This document shows, piece by piece, positions 710 through 10,438 of a stretch of DNA of 64,000 nucleotides. The stretch comes from Pocillopora damicornis (lineage: Eukaryota), in contig NW_020847109.1 of NCBI RefSeq assembly GCF_003704095.1, forward strand, positions 1 to 64,000, written 5' to 3'. The notes beneath the pieces are model-generated. The model made no database searches, was not told the DNA's origin, and was given only the letters and a program-made list of their open reading frames with translations. The translations under genes were made by a program, and so were the position numbers. Within the stretch, counting starts at the first letter, position 1. Each line of letters begins with the position of its first letter.

Positions 710-3700
710 ATGTCTTCCGGAGAGAAACTTCCCAAAGGCAAGAGCAAGAAAGCTGCTCCAAAGGCCAATTCTACAAAAGGTAAGACATTTTTTATGTCTG
801 TTATGAAATTCGTTATCAGATAATGAACCTGGAGCCAATTGGTAAGTAAATTGTTGTTTAATAGTGCTGTTGAGAGACATCTAAACTTCACCAGGATGAA
901 ATGTAAATTTATTGTTTTCAACCATGTATTACATTCCAGTCAGTCTTACCGCCCTCCCGCTCAAATTGCGTGATCCACGTCTATGAAAAACGTTAGCGAA
1001 AGATTGAGATATCTTTTCCGATTCGATACCATCTATCTCTCTGTTTTTCTTTTCTTTTTTATTAATAACTAGGTAAAGAACCTCAGCTGAACGACCATCG
1101 ATTCCGAGGAGAAGGAGTAAAATTCAAGTGCAAGGTAAGTTCTTCAATGTCTTCTCCTTCACGATTTAAACCAAATAGTTAAAACTGTGAATCGCCAACG
1201 CATCAGTTCGATGTTGGTTAGAAGCATACTATAATTTCAGTGTTATATTATTTTACGTATAGTAACGTTCAACAGATCTGCGATAGAACAATGATACAAA
1301 TTTGTAAACAGTTAAAAGGTGATGTACATTTCAATATGTACAATTGTTTCATAGCTGTTATCTTTATTTCTTGTAGCTTGTAGGCACAACAGATGTAAAC
1401 AATGCGAGAGGTGATGCANNNNNNNNNNNNNNNNNNNNNNNNNNNNNNNNNNNNNNNNNNNNNNNNNNNNNNNNNNNNNNNNNNNNNNNNNNNNNNNNNN
1501 NNNNNNNNNNNNNNNNNNTCTATCTGAAGTGAACATTATTCACTTGTGTTTTTGCATATTCACAGTTTCTGTCATTAAGAAAAGACAAAATCTTTTCATC
1601 ACAATCTTGTTTCTCTCACAAGTTGTTAATTAATAATAAGAATTGGTAACAGGGCCAATAGTAATAGGTGAATCAAATTCAGTCTGTAATCATACAAGTG
1701 ACTAACAGAACTGGATGACAGCAAAACTCGATTCTGATTTGTTAATCTTAAATATGGTTACTGAGTGAATTGGACAACAAGAAGTCCTAATATAATTTAC
1801 TTATAATTACAACAATTTCTGAGAAAACAACTGTTTTTTTTTTACATGGGCTTCCCATTCCAATCTTTGAACACTTAACCATTTATAATCTTTGACAAAA
1901 GTGTAATAGAAGGTTTTAGGTTTTGTCTAATGTACCAAATTCTTCCATTTGGGGAAATCCCCAGCTTTGAATGAAAGTGGTGCCATGGTGACTATAATCA
2001 AGTCTGTGAGTGGTGGATTAATTTGAGTTCATTGATTGACTGATGTAGCTGTTGGATTACAACTCTAGAGAAGAACTAAGAAAAATAATAAATACATTTG
2101 TTCATCCACTGTGGCCAAACACTTCTGCTATTTTTTAGTGATTTGCCATCTGAGTTGTAATTTCAACTTACTAGAACAATTGTTAGTGGGAAGTTAACAG
2201 CCAAGTTGGGTGAAGCAGTTTGGCACCAAAACAGGTTTAACTGCCATGGCAATGCATAGTTTTTAGTCATGGTTATCCCAATAATTTATTTTTTTCACTC
2301 AGTTTGAGTTCTAACTAGCCAAGTTGGGTGAAGCAGTTTGGCACCAAAACAGGTTTAACTCCCATGGCAATGCATAGTTTTTATTCATGGTTATCCCAAT
2401 AATTTATTTTTTTCACTCAGTTTGAGTTCTAACAAGCTACTTTGTTCTATTTTATCAGAGGTTTTTTTGATTGGTGATTAGTTAGGTTTGGTTTAAGAGA
2501 CTCTGTTAAGAAGGTATTAAGTTCTCCAAACTCAGATGGTGATCACGATGCCAGTGCATTCTTATTATCTGGAAAATAGTTTCTTTTTTGGTTAGATGTA
2601 ACTATAACTTTTATGTTATTTTAATGCAAGTAGTCTATTTCTCACAGTTTCCATCTTTAGAAAAATACTATCAAATGTTTGTCCTTTCTTTGTAACTTTT
2701 CACAATTTTGTTTTATAAACCTTTCTCACTCTTTTTTTGTTTTTGTTTTTTGGCCGTTTGGACAAATTTTATAAGGTTTCTTTGGAGCGAAAATTTATAG
2801 TTCATTATTATGTATTTCTTAAAGTTTTTGTCTTGATCATGGTTTATTTGAGGAATTGGCTAGAGAAGGCCCAATGGCTCCCCTTCTTAAATTTTGAGGG
2901 ACCCTTTTCCAAGAGATGGTTCCAAGAAAAGGGTTACCATAACAAGGGTTCGAATGTACCAGTACCTGTATTGTCACTTTAGTGTGTAAACTAAAAAGAG
3001 AACAGATACAGAAGTTTAAAATACTATGAAGTTTAAAAAAAGTATTGTAGCTATCATATCAATTTTTTGCACCCCATTTAACACCCAGTCGTAAGTCTTG
3101 TGGGACATTTTTTTGTATTGTGGAAATCCTGCAAAACTTTTTTCTAGTATAGACTGTGGTAATAAAATTGTCACCAAAATGTTGGTCCTCTCTTTGTGTA
3201 TTTCAAGTACATTTATTATAAACCTTTCTCTTGGTAATGGTTGGTTTTTTTGTTGCTTGTTTGCATAACATTTGATAACATTATTTTGTACTTAAATTTT
3301 CTAATCCAGGCACAAGCCTTAAAGCTGAATAAAGAAAGCAGGGAGCACAAGCAGAAAATAATATTCTATACCTCTTTGAAAGGAATCAGGATAGTGGATG
3401 AGAAGACTCAGGTAAGTCTATGTCTAGCTACAGGGACAAATACAGTGTCATGAGTCTCGTCAGGCTGTCACCTAGTTAAAATTGGCAGTCTCTAAAGTTA
3501 ATTTTTAACAATATTTGAGGACAATTTTCAGATGGTTATGTTACCATCTAAAATCTGGGAATTTTAAGTATTTATGGTAATGATGGGGTAAAAATTATAT
3601 GGTGTCTGAAGCATAAATATTCATTAAGGTCAACTACAAGATGATAACAAGACAATAACATTAAGGGCATGGGATAAGTTTATGGATGTTCACTCTGTCT

Positions 3701-6700
3701 GAGTAACAAACATGATGTTAGTCTGTAGAATTGAAATCATTTTGGTATGTTTTTGCAGAAAGTGCAGCATGAACATCCAATCAATAAGATATCATTTATC
3801 ACTCATGACCCAGAAGACAAGAAAGTATTTGGATATGTGTGTAGTCAGCCCTGTACTACTGGACATAAACTTTATGCTATTAAGTCTGAAAAGCCTGTAA
3901 GTATACTATGTTCATCTTGAATTAACTTTAAAACAATCAGAGAATAATTAATAGGTGCTTGTAGATATGGAATTTCTGTAGTGTTCAACTTCATGACTCA
4001 CAAGTGAGCACAGAGAAAAAGTTAGGTATCAAGTATAGCACTGTATCTAGTATAACACCGCAGTTTATATATAAAGATTCTTCTCGTATAAGAAGTAAGG
4101 TCTGAAATTGGAGAATATTACTTGAGGAATATTCCCCAATATTCCAGAGTTTTAGCTGGGGCGTATGTGATTGTCTAATGCATTTAGACCAATCGTGTGA
4201 GAGAAAAAGTATCACAACTGGTGATATTTGTCAAGTGATATCCCCCAATTTTCAAATATTTTATCCAATGTGATAAAAGTCTTTTTTGTGAAAGATGACA
4301 AGTGTGATCAGGTAATTCTGCATAAACTGTATGTTCATTGTTGCTCACAAGTATTTACTGAAATCTTACATCTCCAAAAATTCACTTCACCTCATGGAAA
4401 CTTTGTCATGATTTGCAATCACTTTCCTTATGTTTCATAATTCATTCTCCTCAGGCAGGGAGTGTCACTGGTACTTTGTATGAATTGTTTCAAGTTGTAT
4501 TTAGACTTCGACAAGAGGCTGGATTAACAAAAAAGGTTCCAAACAATGCTTCTCAGGTTTCAAATGGTAAAATTCTTTGTATTTTTATCTTTTACTTTCT
4601 ATATTGATTAGTGTAATAAGTAGGGGTAATTGTTTCTATTTCAAATCAAGACTCATCGTGAGTAAGACAGTTAATATTATATATGTGTAGCTCATAAAAT
4701 GATAATGGTAATTTAGTTATGATAATTACAATTTTGATTTTTATTATTGCTTCCTTCAGGTCCAAGCTCACAAGAAGGAATTTATGAGGTGCATGGAATA
4801 ACTTTACTCACTAGTTTTGAATTGTATATGGTGTCATTTAAAATTGATATTAATTTGGTCAAAAAGGTCTTTGGTGTTAGATAGCTAACAATTATTCACT
4901 GAAGTGAAGGTGAATAATGGTGGATATTTACCAAAGCGTGAAGTGGCAAGGTAAATATTCAAGACTTTTAGCGACACTGAGGTAAAGAGGTGTTTTGGTA
5001 TAATCCACACAGATTTAAAAAAAAAGTTCATTTCTGTCAATATACCAAGAGATGGTCGGAAATGAAATTGTTGATTAACATGCAATTTTGTCTCTTTGGC
5101 TGCTTGGAGGCGATAAGTACTTGCTACTCACTTCACAGCCAACGTGGAATTGTTTTCTTTAATTAAGTCTTATGTTGATTATTATCAGTATAGAACAAAC
5201 TGGATCTGGTATTTACCAAAAAATGACTTAAAAAAAGAAAATGCCAGTCTTATCAGCAAGAGCTGTTATTTTTATTTATTCAAGGGGTGATTATCTCTCA
5301 ATAATTACTGAAAGTCAGGAACAGTTTCAATTTTTTGAAATAGTTTAAGATGGGAAAAACTGACTACAATATCACTTAGGGTAGATTGAAAGTCAATAAT
5401 GAATGCAGCTTACAGTTGTGTAACTTGATCAGTGCCTTGTGATTGTCAGTCTGTAGTATGGTAAGAGTTACACATGTATGTGCAAATGCTTTTATCCAGG
5501 TGCCTTACAAAAATGGTAACAATAAACAAGCTACGCCCAGTGCACAAGTTGATCATGAATATGAGCCAGTGAACATACCAGTGAATAAAACTGATTCACA
5601 TTATAAAGTAAGTCATTCTTAGTCAGGGGAGGATAATTTTCAGAAAAGCTATTGGTGCACAATCTGAATGCTTACAAGACTCAAAAAATTATTAGTGAAA
5701 CTGAAAACACAGGAAAGATGTGTGGAATGGGTGTTTCTAAGAAAAAAGCCAATCAGAGGCAAGAAATCTTAGCTGTACACAGTAACATGAATTAGTCTTG
5801 TTCCATAATATTGTTTTTGCAACACTTCCTCATTTGAATTTGCATTTGTTGACTTCCCATGGGATGGATTTAAATATTAACCAGAGCTGCACAATATGGA
5901 ATCTGCAGATTGTATACAAGGTCTAGTCACTCACTGTGCTCCCTAACTTAGAAACTACCCAAATATTTCAGAACAGTTTTTTTTATTTTTGTAGTGAATA
6001 TGGCACACAGGACAATTTGGTCCCTGATCTACATGGTCAAAATCATTGTTTTTTGCTTAGCTTATTAGAATGCAGGATTTGATAAGATAACTGACTGAGT
6101 TGTTGTTCATGTATCATTAGGTTCCAAGGACTCCACCTGTTCAGCCAAAACTTTCAGAACCTCCTTCTGAAAGTGACAGAGAGGGAACTGAGGTTGGTTT
6201 GATGATATTTAGCCTTTGCACTCACAATTCATGAATGGCTCATCTAATGGCTTAAGAGATAATCTGGTCAAGTTCCTCTTGACTAATGTGACATTTAGTA
6301 CCTTGGAACTGTTTGAATCTCTCTGACTAGAATTTACTATAATTTGGTTCTTGAATAGTTGATTACTAAATTTTTGCATAGACTTTGATAGTATCTAGGA
6401 CTGGCATATTGATTGTAGAAGAGAAAAAAAGATCTTAGTTTTATGGAGAGGTTTTGCTGTTGGCAATGTGTATCTTTTGTGCAAAATGGCTTACTTAGTT
6501 GATATTGAGCATTTAAATATTGGTAGAAATGTGTCATGACAACACTTGCAGTCCTTTTATAGCAGTCTGTAATTGTGTAATTTGACTTTCACATTATTCT
6601 TTAAAGGCAGCACCCTCAACAGGTTTTCCAAGTTCCTCTTCTCTTCTCAGTCCAACATTCATGAATAAGGTATTTATCACAATGCTTTACAGCCACTGCA

Positions 6701-9700
6701 ACTTTTACAAAGGCTTAAAGTCAAAATAGCCATTAGGAATGGGGAGAATGGAAATAGCAATTGTTATGGTTTGCAGAGCATTGAAAGGTTAGTAGTAGAA
6801 CATCCATATACTGGCTCTTTGACCACTGATGTGAGATTCAATTGGAATTTGGATTCTTAGTCTTTTTTCAGGGAAAAAGGGTGAACTTTGGGAAAAACTG
6901 TCTGCTAAGTTCACCAATAGCAAACTTGGCCCACTTGTGTTGCTAGGTGTATAATTTAGCCCTGTCTACAACAATCAAATGAGAGTGCATGCACCACTGA
7001 ACCATCCTGCTTGCTTCCTTAATGATGTTTTCTAATGAAATATTTTGCCTTTGCAGGATCCTGATCAAGTTTCACAGGTATCCATGGAGTCACCATTTCC
7101 TGCCCATGATGGCACCAGTGCTGACTTGGCATTCTTCAGCTCCTCTGTGTTTGATCATGCAGCAGGTGAATCAGGAGCAGCAGACACAGTATCTGTGGCA
7201 TCAGCTGACATATCAGTAGTGAGAAGTGGTTCAGTGTCCTCTGGATCATCAGAGACACATTCTCAACACACTAAGAGTGGACACTCAAGGAGTGGTTCTC
7301 TGGTGAATCAGATGGGTCCTAATGAAGGATCTCAAGCTGAATTTGCAACTAACTTTGATGATACAAATGTGTGGACTCCCTCCTTTGGTAACAATGATGG
7401 ACAGGAAGGAGACGAGGCACCAAAAAGTGGAAGCCTTGAAAACAAAGTAGCTCTTTTCCCCCCTCTTACTGATGCTAAGAGAGAGGACCAAATAGAGATG
7501 CCATCAGCTTTGGAGACATCAAGTGGTTTAGAAAGCAGTTCAGACCCTTTTGCACCATCAGATGGGTCCACAAGATTGAATGAAATAGCCCAGCCTACTG
7601 GTGATAATTTGTTCACTGAATCATTTGCAACATTCGAAGCATCATTTGACAAGGCTGAGATGAAAAATAACAAAGAGAACCCCTCCTGTTATGACCCTTT
7701 TGCTGCCTCAAGTGATCTTCAAGATAAGGACACTGCCTTTGGAAGTGCTCAACAACAGCACAACTCTGCCAGTGTCCAAGATCAAAGTCAAGAAGACAAT
7801 GGTGATGAGGAAACAGTTGACTCTGAGAGGTCAGATAAAACTGTTGAAAAGGCAGCTGTAAGTTTCTCTTGGGACAATGCATTTGAAGATACAAACACAA
7901 CTTCCCAACCAGAAACAACTCAGAGCACTACTACAACACAAGGACAGTTCTCTTGGATTGAAAGTTTTACTTCTGAGGATGTTGAAACTTTGCCAAAAGC
8001 TGACCCTGTAACTTCAACTGGAGTTTTTTGGGATGATACCTTTGGTGAAGCTGTGGCAGCTGAAAAAGAATCTTCCAACCAAGCAGAGGAACCTTTCTCA
8101 TGGGATAATGCCTTTGGTGGAATGGTTGCAGATAGTAGCAATGAGCAGTTTGACCAATCACCATTTGGTGATCCTTTTAGTGTTTCATCAACTGTGGAGT
8201 CTAGTACTGGTTCAATTGATGTGTCACAGCAAAGTGATCAGCCAGCATCACAGCATGCTATCTCTAATGATCTTGAATTAGGTGGCTCAGTGTCTAATGT
8301 ACAGTCAGAGTTACAGGCTGATGTTCCTCCTGATGAAGCACTTCCTGCGCCTGCATCAAAATCTGAAAGTGACACACTTGTCTCGGATACTCTTGGATCT
8401 GGTGATCAACCTGGAGATCTCTTTGAAGAGCTGAAGATTTCTTTTCAAGGTCCAGACAACCAGAAGAAGGCAGATATTGAGGAAAGTGATGAAAGCTCAG
8501 AGCCTGAAATCAGTAAACTTAGTGAAAATGTTTTATTTGGTGCAGAAAATGCTTCAAATGAATTGGGGGCTGATGAAAACAAGGACACAACTAAGGTAAT
8601 GAATCAGATGGACAGTGCTTTAAACTTAGCAAATGAAGAATCTCCACCCTCAGACACCAAAGAGGAAGAGGTCAAGAAAGAAAAAGATGGAAATTCAGAG
8701 CTCCATATCCAGGAATCAAGTTTTTCAATCTCCCAACGTTCCATCTCTCCAACTGTCCCTCCTCCTCTTCCACCACGCCCTGCATTATCAGCCCCTCCTC
8801 TCCCAGCCAGACCAGCAAGCTTCAACTCAACTTTGTCACCCAGAATTTCCCCTTTCAGTCCCCAGACATCCACAGGGCCACCAGCATCAAACTCTCCACA
8901 TCAAGGGAAGAGGAGCAGTGCAAAGAAAACCCCTCCTGCACTGCCACCTAGAGTAGATTTGAATGAGAAATCACAGAACAAGTCTTCAAATGTAACAGAG
9001 GCATTTCCAGATCCATTTGGTGGAGATGTATTTGGTCAGAAGTTTAATGATAACAAAGTGATAACTCAAGATGAAACCTCTGATTGGGCCACATCATGGC
9101 CTAATTCAGTGGAAGTTTCTTCTGCAGGGAAAGGCAAAGACCTTTCTGATCCTTTCAGTGAAGACTTTTTTACAAACTTTGACTTTCCTCAAAAGTCTAG
9201 TGGGGAAAGTATTAAAGTTGATCCTTTTGGTTCAACAAAAGTACCCTCTGAAATTTTTCCATCAGAATTGGAAAATCAAGATATGTTTGCACAGTTTACC
9301 CCTGGTAAAGGGGAAGGTGTATTTGACAGTGGAGATCCTTTTGAAAATGACTCTTTTGCAGCATTTCCTGCAGATGATCCTTTCAGCGATATAAGTGACC
9401 CTTTTGCAGACAAAGGAGTTTTAGGTGAGGATCCATTTACTGATAGTCCACGAAAGCCACAGTCTGGGAATGCTTTCACTCTCAATGAGGTTTGTATTTA
9501 TATTTTTATTTGTATTTTTTTTTCTCAAGGATTGGTGGATTTCATAGTCTTTTAATTACTCAATGGTCTGACTTGATGAATCTTACATTTTCACTTCACC
9601 ATGGTGTGAGATTTGCATTCTATTGGTTTTTTTACTGAATTAATATATATTTTTTTTCTTCATGTGTGAGCCGGCAGTATTCTTCAAATCTTGTCATCTG

Positions 9701-10438
9701 ATTGGTTCCAAAATTTTTTCATTCATAGAGAGTCTTGCCAAAATTACAGCCCTAGAAAAAAATTAAAATCTTTTTCACCAGCCTAGGTCAGTCCATATTG
9801 GGAAAGACTGTGCCCTGTCTTGAGTGCTGCCTTCGGCCTATGGCCTCAGATGGTATTTAAGACCCCAGACACAGTTTTTCCCAACATGAACCTCCCAGCT
9901 GGTGAATAAGATATATTTATTACTGGCATTATTGTGGTTATTTTTATTATCAGTTAATCAAATTCATCATTAAGGTATTCATTATCATAAAGGGAGGTGT
10001 GGCATTATGTAAGTAGATGATAACCATTTGAAAAAGCACAGCATTTTGGGAATGTCACCACATTGTTTTCTTGGTCAAAATAATCAGAATTGACCTTTAA
10101 AAATACCTTGATGTGGGTTAGAAGAAAATCATGCAGTGTTATGCAAATAGTTTGTTTAGATTGGAGCCAATTGGAATGTCCTAGCTTGTAAACTTTCACG
10201 ATTTTAGAAGTCAAACTTTGTTACATTCTCTCATTTTTTTAACAAAAAATTTTCATTTGAGATTTGTCAAGACAATGTTATTTAATATTTACACATTTAT
10301 GCAGAGGAATAGTTCTCATGTTTGTCTTTAAAAATAAATATGTATATTCTTGATGATCTGGGAGGAATGGTAATAATTTTCTCTTTCCTCATGTGTGTAT
10401 AGAGCTTGGTGGCATCTGATGAAGATTCTTTTGCCTGA
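710..10438 (+). CDS. DAB: Disabled-family (Dab1/Dab2-like) PTB-domain adaptor, about 1100 aa
   Basis: Exons with GT-AG ends and consistent phase: 710-779, 1073-1134, 1377-1418+ (runs into N gap), 3310-3411, 3759-3896, 4455-4566, 4760-4788, 5500-5607, 6121-6192, 6607-6669, 7057-9489, 10403-10438. The translation RFRGEGVKFKCKLVGTTDVNNARGD...EHKQKIIFYTSLKGIRIVDEKT...HEHPINKISFITHDPEDKKVFGYVC...HKLYAIKSEKPAGSVTGTLYELFQVVF matches the Dab PTB domain. The tail has YxVP, DPF and PxLPxR motifs. The terminal exon (SLVASDEDSFA*) is less certain. Confidence 0.9.
1419..1518. other. Assembly gap (100 N) interrupting Dab coding exon 3
   Basis: The N run starts right after codons for NNARGDA. Confidence 0.99.
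2199..2433 (+). repeat. Near-perfect tandem duplication, 118-bp unit x2, in a Dab intron
   Basis: agccaagttgggtgaagcagtttggcacc...tttgagttctaac starts at 2199 and again at 2317 with only a few substitutions. Confidence 0.92.
4885..5140 (-). mobile_element. Interspersed repeat with a terminal imperfect hairpin; same family as 33540-33852, opposite orientation
   Basis: Segments such as tttggctgcttggaggcgataagtacttgctactcacttc are reverse-complement matches of gaagtgaatagcaagtactattcatcctccgagcagccga near 33590. Confidence 0.65.
9773..9910. repeat. Imperfect inverted-repeat (hairpin) element in the last coding intron of Dab
   Basis: ttcaccagc...gggaaagactgtg pairs with cacagtttttccc...gctggtgaa. 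Confidence 0.55.

What the first reader, a model, noticed from the sequence alone, without database searches (positions are those of the whole stretch)
4760..6192. Dab phosphotyrosine motifs are built at splice junctions, resembling Dab1 splice-mediated motif switching in an early-branching animal
Seen: three small exons after the PTB domain give ...QEGIYE|VPYKNG...HEYEPV...DSHYK|VPRTPP. Both YxVP motifs are split exactly at phase-0 junctions (4788/5500 and 5607/6121). Skipping 5500-5607 keeps YEVP but deletes YKNG (a YxN Grb2-type motif), YEPV and YKVP. Skipping 6121-6192 converts YKVP to YKAA. Known: vertebrate Dab1 has YQVP/YDVP Crk/Nck-SH2 sites, and its exon junctions fall after YQ so exon skipping switches SH2 specificity. 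EGIYEVP closely resembles Dab1 EGVYDVP. Inference: this splice-encoded SH2 switch may be much older than the vertebrate Reelin-Dab1 pathway.
Basis: partly seen in the sequence, partly recalled or inferred. Interest (0 to 1): 0.75.

Follow-up and report, generated by a model that had tools for sequence, protein, structure and literature searches.

The report
Coral Disabled gene: tyrosine motifs split by introns
In a coral's single Disabled adaptor gene, two conserved YxVP tyrosine motifs are each written across an exon junction, as in vertebrate Dab1 and several invertebrates, but the coral RNA examined always keeps these exons.

Summary
Exons 4760-4788, 5500-5607 and 6121-6192 of a single-copy coral Disabled (Dab) gene encode ..GIYE|VPYKNG..HEYEPV..SHYK|VPRTPP... 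Both YxVP motifs are split after Y-x at phase-0 GT..AG junctions. RNA contigs of 4 of 4 runs from four studies and a transcript-derived protein, P0080, show these junctions.

A genomic contig of a second stony coral (L002) has the same junctions. In bilaterians, isoform pairs place exon boundaries at the same spot in 7 of 10 species clusters: scallop, limpet, three oysters, an acorn worm and hagfish Dab1. Two papers say the same for mammalian and chick Dab1.

The switch itself is not shown in corals. No skipping joint appeared in 0 of 4 runs, and 44 of 44 stony-coral Dab proteins carry both motifs. The coral also has no YQxI class to switch to, so skipping could only remove or abolish sites. 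The YxN motif is not conserved.

Verdict: an orthologue with a conserved, probably ancestral exon-motif layout. Regulated switching in corals is untested. Interest is moderate.

The parts
710..779 (+). Exon 1, coding part (MSSGEKLPKGKSKKAAPKANSTK plus 1 nt)
   Evidence: It matches the N-terminus of the transcript-derived protein P0080. No RNA was laid here.
1073..1134 (+). Exon 2 (..KEPQLNDHRFRGEGVKFKCK), the start of the PTB region
   Evidence: donor gtaagt; matches P0080. Exon 3 begins at 1377 and runs into a masked stretch, which I left alone.
3310..3411 (+). Exon 4 (PTB domain)
   Evidence: Junction 3411|3759 seen in 4 of 4 RNA runs.
3759..3896 (+). Exon 5 (PTB domain core)
   Evidence: Pfam PID, E 3.2e-4, on this exon alone. 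Junctions seen in 4 of 4 runs.
4455..4566 (+). Exon 6: C-terminal PTB helix (LYELFQVVF) and the start of the linker; ends in phase 1
4760..4788 (+). Exon 7, 29 nt, ..PSSQEGIYE. Supplies Y-E of the first YxVP (site A, Y194)
   Evidence: Joints 4566|4760 and 4788|5500 seen in 4 of 4 runs. L002 has the same exon end, GIYE|gtatgt.
5500..5607 (+). Exon 8, 108 nt, phase 0-0. Starts with V-P (completing site A), carries Y198 (YKNG) and Y216 (YEPV), and ends with Y-K of site B (Y230)
   Evidence: Single copy in the genome. L002 has the equivalent exon, VPYKNG..LHYK|gtaact.
6121..6192 (+). Exon 9, 72 nt, phase 0-0. Starts with V-P (completing site B). Non-consensus donor gttggt
   Evidence: L002 equivalent begins VPKNQP.
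6607..6669 (+). Exon 10, 63 nt, phase 0-0 (AAPSTG..MNK)
7057..9489 (+). Exon 11, 2433 nt (811 codons). Disordered tail with DPF motifs and a PPPLPPRP..PPALPPR proline-rich stretch
   Evidence: Junction 6669|7057 seen in 4 of 4 runs. Single copy.
10403..10438 (+). Last coding exon (SLVASDEDSFA, then stop)
   Evidence: Matches the C-terminus of P0080. No RNA was laid here.

Best explanation
This is the coral's single Disabled (Dab) adaptor gene. It has an N-terminal Dab-type PTB domain, a short linker with a tyrosine cluster, and a long disordered tail rich in DPF motifs and prolines.

The linker carries two conserved YxVP motifs. In each, one exon ends with Y-x and the next exon begins with V-P, across a phase-0 intron. 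In the coral RNA sampled, all these exons are included constitutively.

The junction positions are most likely inherited from the common ancestor of cnidarians and bilaterians. The same boundaries delimit the cassette exons that bilaterian Dab/Dab1 genes splice alternatively. Every module starts with VP and ends with Yx and is a multiple of three bases, so exons can be skipped or duplicated without breaking the frame. A junction then either re-forms YxVP or loses it.

Inferred, not shown: the motifs are phosphorylated by Src/Abl-type kinases and, once phosphorylated, dock Crk/Nck-type SH2 domains (pYxxP).
For: Gene identity:
- Pfam PID on P0080, E 9.3e-16.
- The best solved relatives are the Dab2 and Dab1 PTB domains (E 6e-33 to 2e-29), against GULP at 2e-16 and Numb at 4e-10.
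- Close relatives are named 'Protein disabled' or 'disabled homolog 2-like' by their sources.
- The gene is single copy in the genome.

Junctions:
- 7 of 7 junctions appear in 4 of 4 RNA runs, all GT..AG.
- The same junctions are in the genomic contig L002 from another stony coral.
- Stylophora protein P0045 starts in the retained 3' end of intron 7, directly before VPYKNG.

Motif conservation:
- 44 of 44 stony-coral proteins carry G[IV]YEVP and HY[KEQ]VP.
- Nematostella has IYEEP and HYKVP; Xenia has LYSEP and HYDVP.
- Two aligned YxVP sites occur in Lingula, scallops, limpet, Lineus and crinoids.

Boundaries in bilaterians:
- In 7 of 10 species clusters, isoform pairs differ by a segment that starts with VP right after Y-x or ends with Y-x right before [VF]P. 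Six are unambiguous to the residue and one is ambiguous by 2 residues.
- An oyster skip form also exists as a transcript-assembly protein, P0199.

Vertebrate Dab1: passages of PMC3044655 and PMC3232236.

SH2 plausibility: the Crk SH2 preference for pYxxP is pre-metazoan, and cnidarians have crk orthologues (passages of PMC5043372).

Tyrosine distribution: 4 of the 5 tyrosines outside the PTB domain lie in this cluster.
Against: - Genomic intron positions were checked in only two stony corals.
- The bilaterian boundaries are inferred from protein isoforms, which are mostly predicted RefSeq models, and these give no intron phase.
- Y-[QEK]-V is encoded as ..AG|GT.. or ..AA|GT.., which resembles a proto-splice site, so parallel intron gain is possible.
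- Site A is YEEP in Nematostella and YSEP in Xenia. That is YxxP, not YxVP.
- All 13 named arthropod Dabs lack the motifs.
- No phosphorylation or SH2-binding data exist for any cnidarian Dab.
- No intronic sequence is conserved between the window and L002 beyond the splice sites, so there is no sign of conserved splicing regulators.
Confidence: 0.7

Rival explanations
1. One reading: corals actually use regulated skipping of exon 8 and/or exon 9 to change the number or nature of SH2-docking sites, as vertebrate Dab1 does, in tissues or stages not sampled here.
For: - Exons 8, 9 and 10 are symmetric (108, 72 and 63 nt, phase 0-0).
- The exon 9 donor (gttggt) and the exon 7 donor (gtgcat) are non-consensus.
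- Homologous cassettes are alternatively included in bivalves, a limpet, a hemichordate and hagfish and in mammals and chick.
- Contigs drop rare variants, so cannot show absence.
Against: - 0 of 4 RNA runs show a joint 4788>6121, 5607>6607 or 4788>6607.
- 44 of 44 stony-coral proteins with the PTB end, most of them from transcript assemblies, carry exons 7-9 in full.
- Length differences within the clusters are N-terminal ORF extensions or indels in exon 11.
- No flanking intron sequence is conserved between the two corals.
- There is no YQxI class to switch to.
Confidence: 0.2
2. The coincidence of junction and motif is convergent. Introns were gained independently at AG|GT proto-splice sites created by Y-[QEK]-V codons, so the coral and bilaterian layouts are not homologous.
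For: - The exon ends are GAG|GTG and AAA|GTT in the window and GAG|GTA and AAG|GTT in L002. These fit the proto-splice consensus, which I cite from memory.
- Intron phase in bilaterians was not determined.
Against: The same residue-level boundary recurs at aligned sites in corals, three mollusc lineages, a hemichordate and vertebrates (PMC3232236). That would need many independent gains. Both sites share it within each gene.
Confidence: 0.1
3. The conserved YxVP elements are not phosphotyrosine docking sites in corals. They would serve another function, such as a non-phosphorylated short linear motif or a sorting signal, and the likeness to Dab1 signalling sites would be superficial.
For: - No phosphorylation data exist.
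- The tail of the protein looks like an endocytic adaptor, with 9 DPF motifs.
- Arthropods lost the motifs yet keep Dab.
Against: - Tyr and Pro are the invariant positions across Anthozoa: Y230, V232 and P233 are invariant, and Y194 and P197 are nearly invariant, in alignment A1.
- This matches the pYxxP consensus of Crk-type SH2 domains, which is older than animals (PMC5043372 passages).
- Tyrosine is otherwise almost absent from the roughly 860-residue tail.
Confidence: 0.1

Closest known systems
Vertebrate Dab1 exons 6-9 (Dab1-L / Dab1-E; 'splice-mediated motif switching', Gao et al. 2012)
   Same: A tyrosine cluster sits directly after the Dab PTB domain. Exon junctions fall right after Y-x, and the next exon supplies V-P. 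The small exons are in frame. Skipping re-forms a YxVP site: Y185QVP after loss of exons 7+8, which total 105 nt (passages of PMC3044655 and PMC3232236). In hagfish Dab1, isoforms X1 and X2 differ by an exon that begins with VP.
   Different: Dab1 has two motif classes, YQXI and YXVP, and skipping converts one into the other. The coral has only YxVP/YxxP-type sites. Dab1 skipping is documented in tissue, whereas none was seen in coral RNA. Dab1 lacks the long DPF-rich tail. I could not read Gao et al. 2012 itself because it is not held. I know only its title, from a reference list.
Dab genes of invertebrate bilaterians (Argopecten, Patella, Crassostrea/Saccostrea/Ostrea, Ptychodera; RefSeq isoforms and one transcript assembly)
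   Same: They have the same overall build: PTB, one or two YxVP sites, and a DPF/proline-rich tail. The sites align with coral sites A and B. Cassette segments start with VP after Y-x or end with Y-x before VP. The Argopecten X3 form equals what skipping coral exon 8 would give, with YQ|VP re-formed. The Patella X2 form (YA|GI) and Ptychodera X3 form (YQ|EK) equal what skipping coral exon 9 would give.
   Different: In these animals alternative forms are annotated, and for the oyster one is also seen as a transcript protein, P0199. In corals only the full form is seen. Coral exon 8 is longer at 36 codons and carries two extra tyrosines.
Vertebrate Dab2 (endocytic adaptor)
   Same: It is the best PTB match among solved structures (E 6e-33). 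It also has a long tail with AP-2-type DPF motifs and a proline-rich end; the functional meaning of these motifs is recalled, not tested. NCBI names the Acropora orthologues 'disabled homolog 2-like'.
   Different: I recall that Dab2 is not known for a post-PTB YxVP cluster, but I did not test this because no vertebrate Dab2 sequence was fetched. Its known alternative splicing concerns other parts of the protein. I saw this only in a search listing, the abstract start of PMC5056475.

Membership tests
Disabled (Dab/Dab1/Dab2) adaptor family | N-terminal PTB/PID domain of the Dab type | tested here: met
   Pfam PID scores E 9.3e-16 on P0080 and E 3.2e-4 on exon 5 alone. In the PDB ranking, Dab2 and Dab1 (E 6e-33 to 2e-29) stand far ahead of GULP (2e-16) and Numb (4e-10).
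Disabled (Dab/Dab1/Dab2) adaptor family | Basic lipid/sulfatide-binding motif just before the PTB domain (Pfam DAB2_SBM) | tested here: inconclusive
   PF21792 matches residues 33-47 of P0080 at 18.9 bits, below the curated cut-off of 27. Hagfish Dab1 (35.6 bits) and the scallop Dab (27.5 bits) pass it.
Disabled (Dab/Dab1/Dab2) adaptor family | Long disordered C-terminal part with DPF motifs and proline-rich SH3-ligand stretches | tested here: met
   P0080 has 9 DPF motifs and 12 PxxP motifs. No Pfam domain was found in the 809 residues of the exon 11 translation scanned (7057-9483; the exon ends at 9489). What the motifs bind is recalled, not tested.
Disabled (Dab/Dab1/Dab2) adaptor family | Orthology: nearest relatives are Dab proteins, and the gene is single copy | tested here: met
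   Nearest relatives are 'Protein disabled' in Stylophora (82% identical to P0080 in A1) and in Acropora cervicornis. There is one locus in the 234 Mb genome.
Dab1-type splice-mediated motif switching | Tyrosine motif split after Y-x by an intron, with the following exon supplying the +2/+3 residues | tested here: met
   YE|VP at 4788|5500 and YK|VP at 5607|6121, both phase 0. The same is true in L002.
Dab1-type splice-mediated motif switching | Cassette exons whose length is a multiple of three, so that skipping stays in frame | tested here: met
   Exons 8, 9 and 10 are 108, 72 and 63 nt.
Dab1-type splice-mediated motif switching | Alternative inclusion and exclusion actually present in RNA | tested here: inconclusive
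   None was seen. 0 of 4 RNA runs show a skipping joint, and 0 of 44 stony-coral proteins lack exon 8 or 9. However, the runs are kept as contigs, which drop rare variants, and life stages were not sampled.
Dab1-type splice-mediated motif switching | Two motif classes (YQXI and YXVP) that skipping converts into each other | tested here: not met
   The coral tyrosine contexts are GIYEVP, VPYKNG, HEYEPV and SHYKVP, with no YQxI. Skipping exon 8 would re-form YEVP, and skipping exon 9 would give YKAA.
Dab1-type splice-mediated motif switching | Phosphorylation by Src/Abl-family kinases, with SH2 partners depending on the isoform | not testable with these tools
   Only indirect support: the Crk SH2 preference for pYxxP is pre-metazoan and cnidarians have crk orthologues (passages of PMC5043372).

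The most novel reading that the evidence does not exclude
The exon-junction coding of phosphotyrosine docking motifs in Dab, with modules that begin with VP and end with Y-x, was already present in the cnidarian-bilaterian ancestor. It would still be used as a splice switch in corals in stages or cell types not sampled here, such as larvae, settlement or neurons. Splice-tuned SH2 docking on Dab would then be hundreds of millions of years older than Reelin-Dab1 signalling in the vertebrate brain.
Probability: 0.2. Interest if true: 0.65.

Novelty: new member of a known kind. Interest (0 to 1): 0.45.

Why it matters
Dab1's tyrosine cluster and its splice-mediated reshuffling are usually discussed as part of vertebrate Reelin signalling. 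Here the same exon-motif layout appears in a coral. The protein isoforms gathered along the way show the same boundaries, and real or annotated alternative forms, in molluscs, a hemichordate and hagfish. This points to an ancestral modular design of the Dab linker, in which exon gain, loss or skipping changes the number of pYxVP docking sites without breaking the frame.

It also gives direct tests. One is junction-read counts or RT-PCR in corals and Nematostella. Another is SH2-binding assays with cnidarian Crk/Nck.

My five literature searches turned up no description of this for invertebrate or cnidarian Dab. Subscription papers, including Gao et al. 2012 and Gao & Godbout 2013, were not readable, and supplements were closed, so a prior mention cannot be excluded.

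Tried and rejected
Dead ends and negative results:
- Pfam on the small exons one by one. Only exon 5 matched; exons 8, 9, 10 and 11 matched no family.
- Genomic loci of Nematostella and Xenia Dab through the look-up of encoding contigs.
- Gao et al. 2012 (PMC3416185) and Gao & Godbout 2013 (PMC4457513) are not held.
- Skipped isoforms among members of five stony-coral protein clusters (sequences). None was found. The length differences are N-terminal ORF extensions, exon-11 indels, one model lacking exon 4 (P0098), and fragments.
- Conserved intron sequence as a sign of regulated splicing. blastn of window 3700-7300 against L002 hit only exons 5, 6, 8 and 11.
- A second Dab-like gene in the same genome. 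Exon 11 and exon 8 each hit only the window. With the Oculina PTB-kinase protein P0064 as query, the only PTB hit was the window's exon 5, and the rest were kinase loci.
- Earlier notes of this scan. The four notes near the window concern other genes, and a word search found nothing. None was used.

Not used: the big protein search (search of protein representatives), because the operators flagged its cost and the protein's family was not in doubt; structure prediction, because the region of interest is a disordered linker; and the protein atlas.

I made, typed and searched no joined exon sequence of the window. Whole-protein work used natural database proteins (P0080 and others).
Full report
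WHAT IS IN THE WINDOW. Bases 710 to 10438 of the + strand hold one gene of at least 12 coding exons. Scanned exon by exon against Pfam, exon 5 (3759-3896) alone matches the PTB/PID domain (E 3.2e-4). The other six exon translations match nothing.

The exons of the finding are:
- Exon 7, 4760-4788: 29 nt, entered in phase 1, reading ..PSSQEGIYE.
- Exon 8, 5500-5607: 108 nt, reading VPYKNG..HEYEPV..DSHYK.
- Exon 9, 6121-6192: 72 nt, reading VPRTPP..EGTE.
- Exon 10, 6607-6669: 63 nt, reading AAPSTG...
- Exon 11, 7057-9489: 811 codons.

Both YxVP motifs are thus cut between x and V at phase-0 junctions.

RNA EVIDENCE. The look-up of sequencing runs listed 24 runs that hold the stretch. Fourteen are on record as RNA, from 11 studies, and most are labelled coral or marine metagenome. 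I laid window 3250-7600 on four poly(A)/oligo-dT RNA runs from four studies, all kept as Logan contigs.

All seven predicted junctions appear in 4 of 4 runs with GT..AG ends, at contig depths of 58-105. They are 3411|3759, 3896|4455, 4566|4760, 4788|5500, 5607|6121, 6192|6607 and 6669|7057. No joint 4788>6121, 5607>6607 or 4788>6607 is listed in any run (0 of 4).

Contigs of low depth (2-13) cover intron 7 in full and parts of introns 8 and 10. These are unspliced RNA or DNA carry-over. Contigs drop rare variants, so this shows the constitutive form but cannot exclude a minor skipped form.

IDENTITY OF THE GENE. A word search with the exon 11 translation found 32 relatives. One cluster of them holds P0080 (1098 aa, from a transcript assembly). 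It reads through exons 1-12 exactly as predicted, including ..QEGIYEVPYKNG..SHYKVPRTPP..EGTEAAPSTG...

P0080 has a PID domain (E 9.3e-16). Its best solved relatives are the PTB domains of Dab2 and Dab1 (E 6e-33 to 2e-29), ahead of GULP (2e-16) and Numb (4e-10). The nearest named relative is 'Protein disabled' of Stylophora pistillata, 82% identical to P0080 in alignment A1. From that I infer the window comes from a related stony coral. The gene is single copy in the 234 Mb assembly.

The tail has 9 DPF motifs and proline-rich stretches, like endocytic Dab2. This meaning is recalled, not tested. Only 9 of the 1098 residues are tyrosine. Four are in the PTB domain, four are in the 37-residue cluster of exons 7-8, and one lies elsewhere.

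CONSERVATION IN CNIDARIA. Of 46 stored anthozoan proteins that contain the end of the PTB domain, 44 are from stony corals. All 44 carry both G[IV]YEVP and HY[KEQ]VP with the exon 8 sequence between them.

Nematostella has IYEEP and HYKVP, and the octocoral Xenia has LYSEP and HYDVP. In alignment A1 (10 anthozoan proteins), Y230, V232 and P233 are invariant, and Y194 and P197 are nearly so.

The other two tyrosines of exon 8 are less stable:
- YKNG becomes YKDG in Montipora, YKSD in Acropora and FKNG in P0014.
- The middle site is YAEP, YSEP or YTEP in most corals, but YEPV in the window's species (P0080) and YETV in Stylophora.

The YxN 'Grb2' reading is therefore weak.

One scan of metagenome contigs with alignment A1 gave 11 loci.

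L002 (6639 nt) is a genomic piece of the Dab gene of another stony coral, closest to P0014. Its exon 7 ends GIYE|gtatgt. Its exon 8 reads tttag|VPYKNG..LHYK|gtaact. Its exon 9 begins attag|VPKNQP. These are the same two junctions in the same phase.

In Stylophora, protein P0045 begins in a retained intron, and its first residues match the translated 3' end of the window's intron 7 directly before VPYKNG. Outside the exons, the window and L002 share no detectable sequence.

BILATERIANS. A word search with an arthropod-like Dab PTB domain (P0067, unnamed; closest named relatives are beetle proteins) gave 76 proteins. Of the 73 surveyed proteins that contain the PTB end, 17 have at least one YxVP within 140 residues after it. 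Those that carry a source name are molluscs, a brachiopod, a nemertean, crinoids, Ciona and a hemichordate. None of the 13 named arthropod proteins has one. In an alignment of 20 proteins the two sites line up with coral sites A and B.

I then listed the members of 10 species clusters and compared isoforms. In 7 of the 10, two isoforms differ by a segment bounded at these motifs:
- Argopecten X1/X3: 17 residues, VP..HIYA between YQ and VP. The placement is ambiguous by 2 residues.
- Patella X1/X2: 28 residues starting with VP after SEYA.
- Ptychodera X1/X3: 35 residues starting with VP after HTYQ.
- Crassostrea virginica, Saccostrea and Ostrea: 14 residues ending ..PIY[DE] before [VF]P.
- Hagfish Dab1 X1/X2: 20 residues starting with VP.

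The other three clusters (Lineus, Anneissia, Antedon) show no difference here.

The oyster skip form also occurs as a protein from a transcript assembly (P0199). The inclusion form is the representative of a cluster with 234 members (P0150). The Mizuhopecten model is the skip form. Most of these are predicted RefSeq models, and I could not check their read support.

WHAT IS KNOWN. Passages of the pig Dab1 paper (PMC3044655) and of Katyal et al. 2011 (PMC3232236) state the following. Exons 7 and 8 (105 nt) hold Y198/Y200 and Y220. Their removal changes Y185 from YQXI to YQVP. Y232DVP is retained, and YXVP sites are Abl/Crk recognition sites.

The paper that named the mechanism (Gao et al. 2012) and the 2013 review are not held. 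I saw only their titles, in a reference list. Passages of PMC5043372 report that the Crk SH2 preference for pYxxP predates animals and that cnidarians have crk orthologues.

Five literature searches listed nothing on this layout in invertebrate or cnidarian Dab. Supplements were closed and could hold exon tables.

INTERPRETATION. Shown:
- The gene, its junctions and its constitutive splicing in four adult-type RNA samples.
- Conservation of both motifs in Anthozoa.
- Identical junctions in a second coral.
- Residue-level agreement with the isoform boundaries of several bilaterian phyla and with mammalian and chick Dab1.

Inferred:
- The two introns are ancestral. The rival is parallel gain at AG|GT-like sites.
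- The motifs are phosphorylated and dock Crk/Nck-type SH2 domains.

Not shown: any skipping in corals.

The coral also fails one defining feature of the Dab1 mechanism. It has no YQXI class, so skipping could only lower the number of YxVP sites (exon 8) or abolish site B (exon 9). In addition, the vertebrate site that GIYEVP resembles most in sequence (DGIYDVP in hagfish Dab1) lies inside an exon. Sequence likeness and junction likeness therefore point to different vertebrate sites.

VERDICT. This is the coral orthologue of Dab with a conserved, probably ancestral, exon-junction coding of YxVP motifs. A working splice switch in corals remains a hypothesis, at about 0.2. Novelty: a new member of a known kind. 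Interest: 0.45.

Noticed in passing
window 4913-5044 (inside intron 7): In 3 of 4 RNA runs, contigs of depth 15-50 lie here with a non-canonical joint 4934>5022 (AG..AA). They run on into unrelated sequence on both sides (loose ends at 4913/4916 and 5044). This looks like a transcribed repeat or a copy expressed from another locus, not part of the Dab mRNA.
   Followed up: no
window 4763-5527, 5580-6093, 6641-7084: Low-depth contigs (2-13, against 58-105 for the spliced form) cover intron 7 in full and parts of introns 8 and 10. These are unspliced RNA or DNA carry-over in the RNA libraries. A Stylophora protein (P0045) also starts in retained intron 7.
   Followed up: partly
window 2199-2434 (intron 3): A tandem duplication of a 118-nt unit, with the two copies 97% identical.
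   Followed up: no
P0064 / P0065 (Oculina patagonica); own-genome hits: Oculina has a predicted protein whose first ~230 residues resemble the Dab PTB exons up to ..SSQVSNG. That is the position where the window's exon 6 ends. It then continues as a long coiled coil and a protein kinase domain. In the window's genome the kinase part hits dozens of loci (58 candidates scored, 60 matches listed), but the PTB part hits only the window's exon 5. The fusion is therefore absent here, missed by the search, or an annotation artefact.
   Followed up: partly
L002 3427-3552: Exon 8 of the other coral carries an internal duplication, QHYAEPDQHYAEP, which gives it one more Y-A-E-P site than its relatives. 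The number of tyrosine motifs in this exon varies between corals.
   Followed up: no
P0047-P0060 (Montipora), P0062/P0098-P0109 (Acropora): Acroporid corals have a further site after site B, in the exon 9 region: PLYAVP in Montipora and PIYTTP in Acropora. The window's species lacks it.
   Followed up: no
window 7057-9489: Repeated SWDNAF / FWDDTF / SWDNAF / SWIESF elements (W-x-x-x-F) and 9 DPF motifs lie in exon 11. This roughly 860-residue tail holds only one tyrosine.
   Followed up: no
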